Shown in pieces: positions 4,332-52,520 of a DNA stretch of 64,000 nt. Origin of the DNA: Isurus oxyrinchus. Lineage: Eukaryota. Made by a program: the position numbers and the translations under genes. Below the pieces are notes generated by a model. It ran no database searches and had not been told where the DNA came from. It worked only from the letters and a program-made list of their open reading frames with translations. The DNA lies in assembly GCA_026770705.1 (NCBI GenBank), contig JANJGN010000100.1:372001-436000 (forward strand). Reading direction: 5' to 3'. How positions within the stretch are numbered: position 1 is the first letter of the stretch; every line of letters begins with the position of its first letter.

Positions 4332-4365
4332 TGCAGTAGCAAAGATTGACCAGTGGGTGGCGGTG
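4332..4365 (+). promoter_or_regulatory. CTCF-like site (upstream motif + core)
   Basis: TGCAGTAGC-6bp-TGACCAGTGGGTGGCGGTG. Confidence 0.6.
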
Positions 4366-4389
4366 AAACCGTGATTGCTTCCATCACAT

Positions 4390-5690
4390 GAAGCAGGCAC
4401 TGTCTCTGTTCATATTAAATTAGACGCCATTTCTGTTTCTATTACACTAGGATTTGTCTCTGATCATATTAGAAAAGGTCATCTCTCAGTTGTTTCTCTA
4501 ATTGGCTCAGTCGCAGTTGTTTATATACTGGACTAGGGCCACAATACAATTGGCACTAGCTCAGTCATTACTGCACTGAAGCAGGTCTCGGCTAAAGTTA
4601 CAATAAGCCATGCCCCAGTTGGCACTGCACTAGAGCTTGTCTCTGGTCATGGAAAACTAGAACATGTTTTCATTTGCATTTGACAAGACTCTGTCTCTGC
4701 TATTACTCCAGCAGAACGTGCCACGTGTCTATCAAACTGGACCCTGTCTCAGTTAATGCTGCACTAATACATGTCTCCATTCATATCACACAATTCCCTG
4801 TTTCTGCTGTTATTGTCCTTTATAATGACTTTGTTATTGCTGTACTTGTCCATGTCTCTGTTTTTATTAATCTCCTACCTTTGCAGGTATTTAATTTACC
4901 AGACACTGCGTCAGATTATATTAAAAAGAACCCTGAATTATGTGAAACTCCACTAGACCCTGTATCAGTTTTCTTAAACTGGATCCAGCCTGTGTTATTG
5001 CTACACTAGGCAGGTTCGTATTACACAAGATCCTGTTTCAGTTATTACTGTACTCAGCACTGCCTCACTTATGTTTCACTAGGTCACGGCCCTGCTTATA
5101 ACACACTCAATCATGTCTGTACTTATATTCCTCTAGACCGTATTTCAGAACAATTTACACTAGACTCTCTATCAGCCTGTATCACACTCGAAATTGTCAG
5201 CCTTTTTAACTAAACTGGATCCTGTCTCTGCAGAGGCTTTGTCTTTGTACCTCTGTCTCTGCTTCTATTCCACTCTCCCTTTCCGTGTTTTTATTCCAGG
5301 AGATCATCCCTGTCTCTCTTACACTGGCGGCACTCTCCGTTATTACAACTTAGACTCTATCTAGGAAGCAATTACTCTATGCCCCGTGCCTGTAATAACT
5401 GCCCTATTTCACTTGATGTTGATCCAGGCCCTGTATCAGTAACTACTGCATTAGCCCCGTCTCCGCTATTACAGCAGTAAACCCTATCTATGTTAATATA
5501 GCACTCATCCCCATCCCTGTTCATTGTGCACTAGGTCACGTCTTTGCTTAAGTAACATTAGATGGTCTCTATTGTTACTGCACTAGTAATGTCTCTGCTT
5601 AAATTACACTAGGCCCTGTCTCACTAATTACCACACCAGGCTCTGTCCCTGTTGTTACTACACTATTCTATGTTTCTATAAGGTGAACGT
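4390..5690 (+). repeat. Degenerate ~27-bp minisatellite arm (left arm of composite element copy A)
   Basis: Recurrent ACACTAGRCCCTGTCTCWGTT(A/T)TTACTGC-like units. Confidence 0.8.
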
Positions 5691-48239: not shown

Positions 48240-51200
48240 AGCAACTGGTTCCCTTTATATTACACCAGATCCTGCCTCAATTATTACTCTTTGAGTTCAA
48301 GTCACACTTTTAGTTTTGCTGAAACCTGTGAAATTTATGGATGCATAATCTGGTATTTGTATTTTTATTACACTAGGCTCTGACACAATTAACTCTGTGC
48401 TAATCAAGCCTCTGTTTCAGGCCGGCCCCCAAATCAGTTACTACTACATTAGAGCATTTCGCTATTTATATTATATAACACTCTGTTTCAGTTATTAGTG
48501 AACCATACACCGTGTCTCTATATGTCGCACTCGACCACGTCTCAGTTACTACTATACTAGAACATGTATGTGTTAATATTACCCTGGATCCTGTCTCTGT
48601 TGTTACTGCACTGGAACCTGTCTCCATTTATAATGTTTTACATAATTGTTTCTGTTAAAATTGCACTGGAAAATATATCTCTTTATATTTTACAGTGGGC
48701 CCTTTCTCAGTTATTACTGCCCTATACCATGTTTCTGTTAAGCTAACACTTTACCCACGCCAGTAAACATTGAATTATATCATGGCAAACGTATTGGAAA
48801 CTGGTGAGGAAATAGTGAAGTTAACGCGCAGCACAAAACAATGGAAACAGAAACAATTTTTTTTAATTGAATTTCATTGAGAGTGGAAAGTGTTACATTC
48901 CATTCCAGGTGAGAGAATTACAGATTTATTATGCTCACGTTAGATAAAGGTACAGTTGCATTTTCACCGCCTCTTGCACAGATCATCACACACTCGAGTG
49001 ACGCACAAGTGATCACTTGTCAACAAACAGAGAAAATGGTGGGTAGATGTCCTTTATTCTCCATGTGATTTAATCCACTTTCGAACTGAATTCTGAGCGC
49101 AGCTAAACTCACTTTGGAATCTAAATAGGCATTTTCCACACAAGAACTCGAAAAAGACGTCCGCAACAAGAAATGTTAATGATAATAGATGATCTGAAAT
49201 TGCTGGATGGATGGTTCGAAATATAGATAGACTGACAGCCAAACAGACAGGTACGCAGCTAGATGGGTTGACAGATAGAGAGACTGAGATACACAACATC
49301 TAGCGTAATATATACAGTTTAATGCTAAATAACCTTTTCGGTGGCTCATATGATACAAACAGGGAGATGGTCTTGTATAATGTGAAGAGATGTATGCATC
49401 AGTGCAATTACTTACTCCAACAGGGCCTACTAAAAAACATGAATTGAGACTAGGTCTTTTGCACTGCGATCTGAGACAGAGTCCTGTGTAATTTAAAGGA
49501 AGGCATAACCCAGTCATTATGTATCAGCACCTTTCATGGTCTTAAATACCTCGATCAAAGCCCCTCTTAACACCCTCTATTCTAAGGAAAACGATTCAAG
49601 ATCTCCAAGGTCTAGTAACATTCGGATCAATCTCCTCTTCATCCTCTCTGCGACCTTCAAATGCTTTATAAAACAGAGTTCCTGGAATAATTATGTACAA
49701 TATACATGGAAACACAGTAGGGAGTACTTTAACAAATGTTGTTTTTAATCATTCACTAGGCTGAAGTATTTATTTATCTCTATTCATCCAGGAGATGTGA
49801 GCGTCTCTGACACGGCCAGCATTTCCCCCATGCTCTGCTGTCCTGGAACTGAATATCTGGCTAGACATTTTCAGAGTCGGAGGATAGTTAAGAGTGAACC
49901 ACGTGCTGTGGGCCTGGAGTCACATTTAGGCCAGACTGGGGAAAGATGCATATTTACTTCACCGAATGTTCATTAGTGAACCAGATGCGTTTATAACAAT
50001 GAAAATTTAAAAGATCCAGTTCCATTTCCATTTTTTTTATTCATTCATGGGATTTGTGCGTTTCCAGCTGAACCAACATTCAATAGCCAAACACAATTGC
50101 CCTTGAGAAGGTGTTAGTGAGCAAACCTCTTGTACTGCTGCAGTCCACGTGCTGTAGGGACACCCACAGTGCTTCTAGGAAGGGAGTTGTATGATTTGGA
50201 CGCAAGGATAGTGAAGAAACAGGGACTTTCCATTGTTGTTGCTGTGCTTCTGCTGCCCTTGTTGCCCGGAGAATTGGGGAATATTCCACCACACTCCTGA
50301 CATGTGCCTTGTAGTTTGTGGACAGGTATTTGCAGAATTCCCAGCTTCCGAACGGCTCTTGTCTCAATCGCATTTAAATTCCGCCAGCTGCTGTGGTGGG
50401 ATTTGAATTCATGTCCCCAGAAGATGAGTCTGGACCTCTGGGCTAGTGATGAGCACTTGGGACGCTATAACATTCAAGGCTATGGGCCAAGTGCTGGTAA
50501 ATAGGATTAGGTAGGTAGGTAGGTCAAGTGTTTCTCAAGTGCCGGTGCAGACTCGATGGGCCGAAGGGCCTCTTCTGCACTGTGATTCTGTGAATCTGTG
50601 GCAGAGCTACAGCCAGGTCGTGCCTGAGTTAGGGTCCAGTGTATTAAACCGCTTGATACTTTCAAAATGGTGGCAATTCGCCATTTCTAAAGGGGAATTG
50701 GGAGTCGGTAGACATGTTTGACTTAACAACTATTCCAAATCAGTCGATAATAAATAAGTAAAACATTAGAGACTGTCTAATGTAATATAAACCATCCATG
50801 CCCATCCTTACATTACACTAGGCCCTTTTTCAGTTATTGCCGCCTGAGGCAGTGCTGGTTTGGTATGATTTAGGCAAACCAACTTACACTGTCATCTGGT
50901 GGCCAATCGTTGCCATTACTGCTATCGTGAAAATGTCGACGTTCGTACTGTTGTTGATAGAAACGTATCAACAAACAAATTTGCACTTATATTCCACTCA
51001 ACGCATTTTTAATGAAAGGGAATTAAATGCTGTAAAAATAACTGGTGAAGCAAATCCACCTTTGTGGAAGTAACTTGCAAACATTAGGAATAATGTGTCT
51101 TGTATGCACACACTCACAGACACAAATAGACGCAGATACATATGTTGAGGCTCAGTCACACAACCAGTAACCACGGAAAATGTGAGTGTAAAGGCCCTCA

Positions 51201-52520
51201 GGAGAAACATTCCTTAACATTAAAACACGGTGTACAATAGACACAACAGAGATTTCCACTAATCTTTATAAACTGCAATGCGTTCTGGCTCACCTATCCT
51301 TCAGTCCCTCAATCCAGTTCAAATTTTCGAGATTGTCATAAGATTCGATCAGTACTTTCAACAAAACTGTGACATAACACCGAGCAATGGGAAATTGTAC
51401 ACAGCTCCTGATGGCTGTGACCAAGACTAAACGTACTTTACAACAAACAAAAATCCATCTTCCCACCGAGTCAAATATGTTCTTTAATTATTATGAGACA
51501 TACTTCTCCCTTCATCCATCTGTCCATTTACCTATCACAGAAAAAAATGCTGTACCACAATAACTGACATTGGCAATAGATTAATATAAACAAAGTGTCC
51601 AGTGCTGTCATTACAGAAAAAAGGCCTTATTTAACATAAACAGCGATAAGGACTCCTGCACTCTGAGCAGTTTAGTCCATGAATAACTATGGCAGACCCC
51701 GTCGAATATAAACAGGGAGATGACCTCATGCAATTTAAAGGTGGGCATAAAATAGTGCAGAAATAAAGGAGAAAGAGTCTAGTGTAATATAAATAAGGAC
51801 ATGGATGAGTGCAATATAACCAGACACATGCTTCAGTGCAGCAATAACTGAAGAAGGGCCTAGTGTAAAGGATGGAGTTTATTGCACCAATGTCCGTGAC
51901 TGGACCCAGTAGAATATGGACGGAGACATGGTCAGGTTATGGCCTTGCAAACCCCTTCAGTAACTTGAACACTTTAAAACATCTCTTAACTTTCTCTGCT
52001 CTAGGATGCTATTTCTGTCGCTTTTCCACAGAACGGAAGCCCCTCACCCCATTTTGATAAATCCTACGACAGCATCTTCAGAACCCGAGAGCTCTGCGAC
52101 ATAGAAGGACAAGGACAGCAGGTGAATGGAAGCACCAACAACTGCTAATGCCGCTCCAAGTCACACACAATATTCTGATTTGGAAATATAGATTTTTTTC
52201 CTTCGTTGGTATTGAGTCAAAACCCCAGAGCTCCCTTCCCACCTGCACTGTTTTTGGATTTGAAACACACACAAGGCGGCTCACCAACACATTTTCCAGG
52301 GCAATTAGGTTTGGTTAGTAAATGTCGGCCTTGACAGAAATGTCAAAATCTGAGAACGAAGTAGAGCTAGCAATAACTGAGTGAAGGTCTGCTGTGATAT
52401 AAACATAGACATGCTATGGAGCAGTAATAATTGAGGCAGTGTATGTATGTTTTCATGGAAGCAATCGCGCCAGCACTGCCACCAGGTGGCGAAAGATTGC
52501 CATTGCTGTTACTGTAAAAT
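48240..52520 (-). repeat. Composite element copy C (reverse orientation, fragmented by LINE/SINE insertions)
   Basis: 48780-49150 is the reverse complement of the unique core (GTGGATTAAATCACATGGAGAATAAAGGACA...TGTGATGATCTGTGCAAG...AACTGTACCT). Minisatellite arms lie on both sides; head at 52450-52520. Confidence 0.7.
52474..52507 (-). promoter_or_regulatory. CTCF site about 3.9 kb upstream of the IgH promoter
   Basis: Minus strand: AGCAATGGC-6bp-TCGCCACCTGGTGGCAGTG (plus strand GCCACCAGGTGGCG, near-palindromic). Confidence 0.7.

What the first reader, a model, noticed from the sequence alone, without database searches (positions are those of the whole stretch)
4332..52507. Five extended CTCF sites in convergent pairs that enclose the satellite and exclude the IgH cluster
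Seen: sites at 4332-4365 (+), 17643-17676 (-), 20212-20245 (+), 24625-24658 (+) and 52474-52507 (-). Each has a TGCARTRGC-like 9-mer, a 6-bp spacer and a CCASYAGRKGGCR-like core, and the spacing is kept although the flanks have diverged. Known: CTCF ZF9-11 bind an upstream TGCAG-type motif 5-6 bp from the core, loops form between convergent sites, and CTCF elements limit RAG scanning in mammalian Igh. Inference: loops 4.3-17.6 kb and 20.2/24.6-52.5 kb, with the 52.5 kb site as the 5' boundary of the Ig minilocus. This could help explain cluster-autonomous rearrangement in sharks. Because the sites share ancestry, their similarity alone does not prove function.
Basis: partly seen in the sequence, partly recalled or inferred. 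Interest (0 to 1): 0.78.

Follow-up and report, generated by a model that had tools for sequence, protein, structure and literature searches.

The report
Repeat-borne CTCF-type motifs near shark antibody genes
Six, not five, CTCF-like DNA motifs lie in this shark window, five of them as the best-kept part of an old repeated "head plus minisatellite" module, so they are plausible but unproven chromatin-boundary sites and not a purpose-built loop system around the antibody gene cluster.

Summary
The gap between the 9-mer and the 13-mer core is 9 nt in 6 of 6 sites, not 6. This is about the published CTCF ZF9-11 geometry.

Leave-one-out profiles show that five sites (all but 17.6 kb) are the centre of a ~110-bp "head". 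The head starts an old noncoding module with a degenerate ~54-bp minisatellite tail, and two copies are colinear over at least 2.7 kb. Motif columns are better kept than the rest of the head (0.71 vs 0.51, p=0.002). The spacer drifts in sequence but keeps its length, and core variation stays where CTCF tolerates it. Selection for CTCF-type binding is therefore credible, but there are no binding data.

The "convergent pairs enclosing the satellite" follow from the module's fixed head-to-tail polarity. They are not independent evidence for loops. The pair 4.0 and 5.5 kb upstream of the V leader points away from the Ig cluster, opposite to mammalian VH-associated sites, so it would not confine scanning from inside the cluster.

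Contigs from other copies and from a related species read a perfect minus-strand core at the 52.5 kb site.

The scan noted the same module at other Ig clusters of this genome before (s1-300803, s1-869605, s1-866944).

The parts
4299..4407 (+). Head S1. Motif 4332-4362: 9-mer 4332-4340, 9-nt spacer, core 4350-4362. One core mismatch, at position 6.
   Evidence: Leave-one-out E=1.2e-17.
4389..5825 (+). Tail of S1: degenerate ~54-bp satellite-like units. The wider region 4299-7918 is colinear with 24592-27274, apart from a ~1 kb repeat insertion at 6468-7459.
17646..17676 (-). Site S2: a CTCF-like 31-mer with 2 mismatches, including the C of GGC. It lies inside a strong inverted repeat and is not demonstrably a member of the head family.
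   Evidence: Leave-one-out E=0.033 over the motif only. DNA fold z=-4.48.
20179..20286 (+). Head S3. Motif 20212-20242, with one core mismatch at the C of GGC. The tail at 20300-20723 is truncated; reading it by eye, I take the sequence that follows for a LINE-like 3' end.
   Evidence: E=1.6e-13.
24592..24695 (+). Head S4. Motif 24625-24655. Perfect 13-mer core and the weakest upstream element (3 of 10 to the published motif).
   Evidence: (E=2.8e-14).
24700..26483 (+). Tail of S4: satellite-like units, colinear with the S1 tail.
31558..31687 (.). Assembly gap (N). Continuity across it is not established. It was not filled or looked up.
31975..44802 (+). 54-bp satellite. A small array lies at 31975-32489 and the main arrays at 34587-44802. 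No CTCF-like core with up to 1 mismatch lies inside. Its polarity is that of a tail belonging to a minus-strand head, and no such head is found at its right edge.
50845..50952 (-). Motif 50890-50920, with one core mismatch at a G of GGC. It lies 5.5 kb upstream of the V leader ATG.
   Evidence: (E=7.7e-15).
52432..52539 (-). Head S5. Motif 52477-52507, 4.0 kb upstream of the V leader ATG. In this window the minus-strand core has one mismatch and the plus-strand reading at 52479-52491 is perfect. All contigs laid there from 4 runs read the base that makes the minus-strand core perfect.
   Evidence: E=1.1e-15.
56465..58204 (+). Start of the IgH cluster. Leader ATG at 56465; V exon to about 56937, followed by a 23-spacer RSS (heptamer 56938-56944, nonamer 56968-56976). 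D segments lie near 57.35 and 57.75 kb and J from 58157. No CTCF-like core with up to 2 mismatches occurs from 52.5 to 64 kb outside the masked N blocks.
   Evidence: V-set Pfam E=4.8e-12. Sequence read..

Best explanation
Five of the six sites (S1, S3, S4, S6, S5) are the conserved centre of a ~110-bp 'head'. The head opens an old, noncoding repeat module made of the head plus a degenerate ~54-bp minisatellite tail, and two copies are colinear over at least 2.7 kb. The module was multiplied long ago by duplication or transposition, and its head copies are now about 58-71% identical. Its best-kept part is a bipartite CTCF-type motif: an upstream element, a 9-nt spacer of free sequence but fixed length, and a CCASYAGRKGGCR core.

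The most likely reading is that these are repeat-borne CTCF binding sites that selection has retained in at least some copies. Where a tail is detectable the motif points into it. Bound CTCF would therefore turn its cohesin-blocking side towards the repeat array and act as a barrier or loop anchor at the edge of minisatellite or satellite DNA.

The pair S6/S5, 5.5 and 4.0 kb upstream of the V leader, belongs to the upstream flank that is copied along with Ig clusters. It would shield the cluster from whatever is extruded from the upstream side. It is not oriented to confine scanning from inside the cluster.

Shown: the anatomy, the ancestry, the motif conservation and the orientation. Inferred: CTCF occupancy, barrier function and any loop.
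For: - Sites and spacing: 6 matches to the 31-nt pattern against 0 expected.
- Family membership of 5 of 6 sites by leave-one-out nhmmer, E 1e-13 to 1e-17.
- Satellite-like units start at the 3' end of heads S1, S3 and S4. The first bases behind heads S5 and S6 look tail-like in the alignment.
- The S1 and S4 regions are colinear over 2.7 kb.
- Motif columns average 0.71 pairwise identity, against 0.51 for the other 89 head columns (one-sided Mann-Whitney p=0.002). The spacer averages 0.45.
- 9 of 19 invariant head columns fall in the 22 motif columns, and the bipartite template ranks 2nd of 81 offsets.
- Motif identity is at least the non-motif identity in 14 of 15 copy pairs.
- All 5 degenerate core positions vary, against 3 of 8 fixed ones (Fisher p=0.044). 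30 of 30 cells at degenerate positions stay within the allowed class.
- No indel occurs inside the 31-mer in any copy.
- The geometry fits ZF8 spanning 7-8 bp and ZF9-11 at -9 to -18 (passages of PMC10484683).
- Upstream-motif sites are typical of insulators and barriers (passages of PMC12885311).
- Signatures of loop extrusion are reported in a skate (one passage).
- At 52484, all contigs laid from 4 runs (2, 4, 4 and 5 contigs; two species labels) read the base that gives a perfect minus-strand core.
- The scan's earlier notes describe the same pair 4-5.6 kb upstream of V at another cluster.
Against: - There are no occupancy, accessibility or contact data of any kind.
- Only six related copies were compared, so the conservation statistics are modest. 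Among the three closest copies (S1, S3, S4) motif identity (0.64-0.82) barely exceeds flank identity (0.61-0.69).
- 4 of 6 cores (S1, S2, S3, S6) carry a mismatch at a fixed position, and S5 makes 5 of 6 if read on the minus strand. S2, S3 and S6 are hit in GGC, which I recall as highly informative.
- The upstream element matches the published motif well only in S1-S3.
- I had no real CTCF weight matrix and used only the IUPAC consensus.
- One contig from another copy, seen under both species labels, replaces 52467-52561 (most of the S5 head, motif included) with 96 unlike letters. Other contigs skip 50796-50997, which holds the S6 head. Not every copy keeps the heads.
- The whole 6-kb stretch, not only the sites, is covered by several contigs. 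Recurrence at other clusters may therefore only reflect duplication of the whole flank.
- The variant table was cut (798 rows not shown), so no motif-versus-flank rate could be taken from it.
Confidence: 0.5

Rival explanations
1. The sites form convergent CTCF/cohesin loops at 4.3-17.6 kb and 20.2/24.6-52.5 kb. The 52.5 kb site is the 5' boundary of the Ig minilocus and helps to make rearrangement cluster-autonomous.
For: - The strand pattern + - + + - - allows two convergent sets.
- Rearrangement in sharks occurs only within a minilocus (abstract of PMC2435157).
- CTCF sites 0.8, 2-3 or 5-6 kb upstream of VH leaders exist in mouse and were proposed to insulate V segments.
- The pair recurs at other clusters according to the scan's notes.
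Against: - Orientation is dictated by the head-to-tail anatomy, so convergence is not independent evidence.
- S2 is not of the family and has a weakened core.
- S5 and S6 face away from the cluster, opposite to the VH-domain sites that are convergent with downstream anchors.
- No site lies inside or, as far as the window reaches, 3' of the cluster.
- The assembly gap lies inside the proposed large loop.
Confidence: 0.12
2. Neutral relics. The heads are decaying copies of an old repeat that happened to carry a CTCF-like sequence. Nothing binds them now, and the apparent conservation comes from small numbers, alignment anchoring or local mutation bias.
For: - 4 of 6 cores have a mismatch at a fixed position, 5 of 6 with S5 read on the minus strand.
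- The conservation excess is small among the closest copies.
- Some contigs from other copies lack an alignable head.
- The p-values are modest, 0.002 and 0.044.
Against: - The conserved-variable-conserved pattern with a fixed 9-nt gap matches CTCF's contact map.
- Variation is confined to tolerated classes at 30 of 30 cells.
- The motif window is the best-kept part of the head.
- Other copies and the related species keep the canonical base at the one position where this window's S5 deviates.
Confidence: 0.25
3. The conserved 31-mer serves another purpose. It could be a binding site for a different protein (for example an E-box factor, since CAGATG or CACCTG lies in 4 of 6 cores by my reading), or a transposition or recombination signal of the module.
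For: - The module behaves like a mobile or duplicative unit.
- Cores S3, S4, S6 and S5 contain an E-box-like hexamer (sequences).
Against: - S1 and S2 lack the E-box, and the conserved columns extend well beyond it to the upstream element.
- The five heads show no hairpin or terminal inverted repeat (z 0.08, 0.20, 1.53, -1.41, -0.21).
- No tRNA-like head lies upstream of 5 of 6 sites.
- No coding capacity was found: 9 of the 10 longer ORFs scanned lack an Ig domain, and 8 of the 10 have no Pfam hit.
Confidence: 0.1

Closest known systems
Upstream-of-VH CTCF sites of the mouse and human Igh locus (PMC6746451; passages read)
   Same: CTCF-type motifs lie within 8 kb upstream of a VH leader. The mouse classes are about 0.8, 2-3 and 5-6 kb; here the distances are 4.0 and 5.5 kb. 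The sites recur with the duplicated V-bearing unit, mostly lack a CpG in the core, and have been proposed to insulate neighbouring units.
   Different: The mammalian sites share one orientation that is convergent with downstream IGCR1 and super-anchor sites, whereas the shark pair points the other way. The shark pair sits in an old head-plus-minisatellite repeat. Binding was shown in mouse by EMSA, ChIP and enhancer blocking, and nothing has been shown here.
Igh 3' super-anchor and IGCR1 CTCF elements (mentioned in PMC6746451; details recalled)
   Same: Clustered sites oriented towards the upstream side of the locus, which would stop extrusion arriving from that side. This is the orientation of S6 and S5 relative to the V-to-C direction.
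   Different: Those elements lie between or behind the gene segments of one large locus. Here the pair lies in front of a self-contained V-D-D-J-C cluster, and within 56 kb upstream there is no other Ig cluster.
Repeat-borne CTCF sites such as rodent SINE B2 (PMC7520972 and PMC10982698, search listings and abstracts only)
   Same: A CTCF-type motif multiplied as part of a repeated element, so that the sites share flanks and ancestry.
   Different: No SINE hallmarks. There is no tRNA-like head upstream of 5 of 6 sites. The unit is at least 2.7 kb with a minisatellite tail. The copies are old, and the genome-wide copy number is unknown.
CTCF-binding tandem repeats (mammalian macrosatellites, recalled) and the CTCF-motif minisatellite in the AID intron of this genome (scan notes s1-868606 and s1-863557, unchecked)
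   Same: A CTCF-type motif associated with tandemly repeated DNA.
   Different: Here the motif is not in the repeat unit. It occurs once, in a unique head at the edge of the array.

Membership tests
Vertebrate CTCF binding site with upstream (ZF9-11) motif | Core matching CCASYAGRKGGCR(S) | tested here: met
   0 mismatches in S4 and in S5 read on the plus strand; 1 mismatch in S1, S2, S3, S6 and S5 read on the minus strand. The consensus is as printed in PMC6746451. Only the IUPAC consensus was used, not a weight matrix.
Vertebrate CTCF binding site with upstream (ZF9-11) motif | Upstream element at a fixed short distance 5' of the core | tested here: inconclusive
   The distance is fixed at 9 nt in 6 of 6 sites. 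It fits ZF9-11 at -9 to -18 to within about one base; the core numbering is recalled. Match to the published CTGCAGTTCC-like motif is 8, 7, 7, 6, 5 and 3 of 10.
Vertebrate CTCF binding site with upstream (ZF9-11) motif | Motif under more constraint than its flanks | tested here: met
   0.71 vs 0.51 mean pairwise identity, p=0.002. 14 of 15 copy pairs. Class-preserving variation in 30 of 30 cells. The sample is only six copies.
Vertebrate CTCF binding site with upstream (ZF9-11) motif | Occupancy by CTCF in cells | not testable with these tools
   The 24 runs listed were genomic or unlabelled, with no ChIP, CUT&Tag or ATAC library description among them.
Convergent CTCF/cohesin loop anchors | Convergent orientation of the paired sites | tested here: met
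   The strands run + - + + - - along the window. The orientation is fixed by the module's head-to-tail polarity, and S5's best core in this window is on the plus strand.
Convergent CTCF/cohesin loop anchors | Cohesin co-occupancy and a contact signal between the anchors | not testable with these tools
   No Hi-C, Micro-C or RAD21 data were available.
Transposon-borne CTCF site family (SINE B2-like) | Copies share flanking element sequence | tested here: met
   5 of 6 sites were recovered over the full 110-bp head by profiles built without them. S2 was not.
Transposon-borne CTCF site family (SINE B2-like) | Transposon hallmarks (tRNA-derived head, terminal repeats, coding capacity) | tested here: not met
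   A tRNA model hit lies upstream of S1 only; it is a tRNA-Ser candidate within a local tRNA cluster. There is no shared hairpin and no relevant Pfam hit in the ORFs scanned. Target-site duplications were not searched for.
Mammalian-type VH-upstream CTCF elements | Within 8 kb upstream of a VH leader and recurring with the V-bearing unit | tested here: met
   S5 and S6 lie 3958 and 5545 bp from the leader ATG. Several contigs from other copies cover the stretch. Recurrence at named clusters rests on scan notes that I did not check.
Mammalian-type VH-upstream CTCF elements | Orientation convergent with anchors downstream of V | tested here: not met
   S5 and S6, with their upstream elements, are on the strand opposite to V. 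Mouse VH-domain sites are convergent with IGCR1 and the super-anchor.

The most novel reading that the evidence does not exclude
A domesticated head-plus-minisatellite repeat gives each IgM-type cluster of this shark a double, reverse-oriented CTCF barrier about 4 and 5.5 kb in front of its V gene. The barrier would work like the mouse Igh 3' super-anchor for whatever lies upstream. It would stop cohesin-driven scanning and enhancer reach from crossing into the next minilocus. That would be a physical basis for the long-known rule that shark Ig rearrangement stays within one cluster.
Probability: 0.12. Interest if true: 0.75.

Novelty: new member of a known kind. Interest (0 to 1): 0.4.

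Why it matters
Shark heavy-chain genes sit in many small, independently rearranging clusters. What keeps the recombinase and enhancers of one cluster from acting on its neighbours is not known. In the library I searched, none of the 15 papers listed (of 41 holding all four terms) links CTCF to shark Ig clusters. Two key shark IgH papers never mention CTCF.

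A conserved, repeat-borne CTCF-type pair at a fixed distance in front of V gives a concrete target for CUT&Tag, Micro-C and deletion experiments. If it is bound, it would also be an example outside mammals of repeats spreading CTCF sites.

As it stands, this is a motif-level prediction.

Tried and rejected
**tRNA-derived SINE idea.** A tRNA-Ser candidate (4182-4263, 47 bits) ends 35 bp before head S1, which suggested a B2-like element. Rfam at E up to 1 found tRNA hits only at 586-659, 3027-3098, 4182-4263 and 10480-10574, and none upstream of the other five sites. Rejected.

**Hairpin or palindrome idea.** The five heads do not fold better than shuffles. Only S2 does. Rejected for the family.

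**Head as a diverged satellite unit.** Satellite-unit profile hits begin at the 3' end of the heads, and none overlaps the motif. Not supported.

**A head at the edges of the big satellite or at the orphan tail (48-49 kb).** None found at E below 0.3 (sequence read).

**Motif-versus-flank rate from reads.** The variant table was truncated (798 rows not shown), so no rate could be computed.

**Fetching an Ig cluster from another species.** The V-exon protein search gave 13 proteins at E up to 1e-10 among 35 candidates. The best was a Scyliorhinus torazame hypothetical protein, 77% identical, on a 159-kb contig.

**The scan's findings index.** Look-ups by sequence and by relatives were blank.

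**Papers.** Supplementary files were never requested. Position matrices or site lists in supplements of the CTCF papers might have allowed proper scoring.

**Other limits.** Species names were coded, so the species is not known to me.

Full report
**1. What is in the sequence**

The five motifs are at the stated coordinates and strands. The window is 64 kb, with an assembly gap at 31558-31687 and four N blocks between 62568 and 63888.

The 13-mer CCASYAGRKGGCR with up to one mismatch occurs 7 times against 1.01 expected, and 0 of 100 shuffles reach 7. All seven lie in the sites discussed here. With up to two mismatches there is no excess (17 against 15.6 expected), and no match lies between 52.5 and 64 kb.

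With a 9-nt spacer it finds six sites against 0.00 expected: 4332-4362 (+, S1), 17646-17676 (-, S2), 20212-20242 (+, S3), 24625-24655 (+, S4), 50890-50920 (-, S6) and 52477-52507 (-, S5).

**2. Is the geometry that of CTCF?**

Passages of PMC10484683 state three things. The CORE spans base pairs 1-15. ZF8 bridges about 7-8 bp of minor groove without reading bases. ZF9-11 occupy -9 to -18. A 9-mer ending 9 nt before the core falls on that stretch to within about one base; the numbering of core position 1 is my recollection.

The consensus CCASYAGRKGGCRS is printed in PMC6746451.

Against the published 'CTGCAGTTCC-like' upstream motif (PMC12885311), the matches at the observed register are 8, 7, 7, 6, 5 and 3 of 10 for S1, S2, S3, S5, S6 and S4. 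In the window, 0.5% of random places reach 7 or more. The core is therefore clearly CTCF-type. The upstream half is convincing only in S1-S3.

**3. The sites belong to a repeat module**

A profile of the ~110-bp region around the motif finds exactly these six places and nothing else below E=0.3. Those E-values are circular, so I repeated the search leaving each copy out.

| Site | Leave-one-out result |
|---|---|
| S1 | E=1.2e-17, full head |
| S3 | E=1.6e-13, full head |
| S4 | E=2.8e-14, full head |
| S6 | E=7.7e-15, nearly full head (model 10-110) |
| S5 | E=1.1e-15, full head |
| S2 | E=0.033, 10 bits, motif region only |

S2 also sits in a strong inverted repeat (DNA fold z=-4.48). The five heads do not fold (z between -1.41 and 1.53). 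Five sites thus share ancestry, and S2 may be independent.

Behind heads S1, S3 and S4 a profile of the 54-bp satellite unit finds degenerate units, starting at the head's 3' end and never overlapping the motif. The first bases behind heads S5 and S6 also look tail-like in the alignment.

The S1 region (4299-7918) is colinear with the S4 region (24592-27274), apart from a ~1 kb repeat insertion. The copied unit is therefore at least 2.7 kb. The big satellite (34587-44802, plus 31975-32489) has the polarity of a tail belonging to a minus-strand head. No such head survives at its right edge.

**4. Is the motif more than a passenger?**

In the six-copy alignment:
- The 22 motif columns have mean pairwise identity 0.71. 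The other 89 head columns have 0.51 (one-sided Mann-Whitney p=0.002).
- The 9-nt spacer has 0.45 and no length change.
- 9 of 19 invariant columns are motif columns.
- The bipartite template ranks 2nd of 81 offsets, and the best offset is one base away.
- Motif identity is at least the non-motif identity in 14 of 15 copy pairs.
- All 5 degenerate core positions vary, but only within the class the consensus allows (30 of 30 cells).
- 3 of 8 fixed positions vary (43 of 48 cells match; Fisher p=0.044).

This conserved-free-conserved pattern is what CTCF contacts predict.

Against it:
- The sample is six related copies.
- Among the three closest copies the excess is small.
- Four cores carry a mismatch at a fixed position, and S5 is a fifth if read on the minus strand.
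- I had no weight matrix.

**5. Reads**

I spent one run search and one laying call on 48701-54700, centred on S6 and S5. All four runs are contigs. Three come from one sample of the source species label and one from a related label that holds about 0.27 of the sampled words.

Every 200-bp bin is covered, and listed places carry 1-7 contigs in the runs that reach them. The whole stretch, not only the heads, therefore exists in several copies. A very high-copy repeat lies at about 49.9-50.7 kb.

Results at the sites:
- At 52484, all contigs laid (2, 4, 4 and 5) read T where the window has A. On the minus strand this turns S5's single core mismatch into a perfect consensus. The window's base is a private allele, a copy-specific change or an assembly error.
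- At 50895 (S6), the other copies read a base that stays within the allowed class.

Against conservation:
- One contig, seen under both species labels, replaces 52467-52561 with 96 unlike letters.
- Other contigs skip 50796-50997.

The variant table was cut (798 rows not shown), so no rate test was possible.

**6. The Ig cluster and orientation**

The ORF at 56611-56970 is a V-set domain (E=4.8e-12). Reading the sequence gives the following:
- a leader ATG at 56465;
- a V exon ending near 56937 with a 23-spacer RSS;
- two D segments;
- a J from 58157.

S5 and S6 therefore lie 3958 and 5545 bp upstream of the leader, on the opposite strand.

In mouse, 58% of VH-domain CTCF sites lie upstream of a leader (about 0.8, 2-3 or 5-6 kb). 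More than 98% share one orientation, which is convergent with IGCR1 and the super-anchor downstream. The shark pair has the other orientation.

With CTCF's blocking side towards the motif's 3' end (passages place it downstream of the core), the pair would stall cohesin arriving from the satellite side. It would not stall cohesin arriving from within the cluster. This fits 'exclude the Ig cluster' in a weak sense. It does not fit a role in confining RAG scanning inside the cluster.

**7. The loop claim**

Each head points into its own tail, so heads on either side of a tail-derived satellite are convergent by construction. The strand order + - + + - - carries no independent weight. The partner of the small 'loop' (S2) is the weakest and least related site. 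The gap at 31558-31687 lies inside the large 'loop'. Its left flank ends in a GA microsatellite, its right flank starts in degenerate satellite-like sequence, and I could not test continuity.

**8. What is known and what the scan saw before**

The library search for CTCF, shark, immunoglobulin and cluster returned 41 papers. None of the 15 listed treats CTCF at shark Ig clusters. A second search with transposable element and ChIP-seq terms listed none on sharks either. PMC2435157 (rearrangement only within a minilocus; abstract) and PMC12227049 have zero occurrences of 'CTCF'. [quoted passage not shown]

The scan itself has noted the same thing on other pieces of this genome:
- s1-300803: a reverse-oriented pair 4-5.6 kb upstream of V, judged to be old copies of a 'motif head plus minisatellite tail' module;
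- s1-869605;
- s1-866944.

These are unchecked notes. My in-window results agree with the first. I could not see the other windows.

**9. Verdict**

- there are six sites, not five;
- the spacing is 9 nt, not 6;
- S2 stands apart from the family;
- S5's strand is ambiguous in this copy;
- the upstream element is weak in half of the sites.

The best reading is a set of repeat-borne CTCF-type motifs under some constraint. They are probably bound in part, and they would act as barriers at the edge of repeat arrays and in front of Ig clusters. The specific loops and the link to cluster-autonomous rearrangement remain guesses, and the orientation speaks against the latter. Interest is moderate.

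Noticed in passing
window 586-659 (+), 3027-3098 (-), 4182-4263 (+), 10480-10574 (-): Four tRNA-model hits within 10 kb (36, 28, 47 and 50 bits). ARAGORN calls three of them: Ser(tga), an odd Tyr(ata) of 97 nt that may hold an intron, and one undetermined. This looks like a small tRNA gene cluster about 46 kb upstream of the Ig cluster. The tRNA-Ser candidate ends 35 bp before head S1.
   Followed up: partly
window 37502-37625 and 60198-60327: The near-perfect hairpin inside the satellite (scan note s1-871989) gives sub-threshold plant-miRNA-family hits on both strands (MIR1033, 53 bits against a gathering score of 70). These merely reflect a long perfect stem. A 130-bp relative (78% identical to 37549-37676) lies in the J-C intron of the Ig cluster.
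   Followed up: partly
window 49900-50700: A very high-copy repeat. The summed contig word depth is 2e5-8e5, against about 500-1000 beside it, in both species labels. It separates head S6 from the satellite-like units at 49.0-49.5 kb.
   Followed up: no
window 6468-7459, 14154-15014, 16818-17480, 27960-28122, 50031-50219, 52063-52251: Copies of one interspersed repeat, 70-84% identical, several of them inserted next to or inside the head-tail modules. Reverse-transcriptase-like ORF fragments occur at 13731-14027 (RVT_1, E=6e-4, below Pfam's cutoff). By eye, a LINE-like 3'-end ORF lies at 29548-30292.
   Followed up: partly
window 8624-9360: A long degenerate GT microsatellite (about 370 units, 59% matches). 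A related GT-rich stretch lies at 52774-52896, just on the V side of head S5.
   Followed up: no
window 56938-56976 and 52500-64000: The Ig V segment has a 23-spacer RSS but no CTCF-like core behind it (none with up to 2 mismatches from 52.5 to 64 kb outside the N blocks). This differs from the RSS-coupled CTCF-like sites that the scan reports at TCR V segments of the same genome (unchecked).
   Followed up: partly
window 52484: The window reads A where all contigs laid from four runs of two species labels read T. This is a private allele, a copy-specific change or an assembly error, and it sits exactly at a fixed position of the S5 core.
   Followed up: partly
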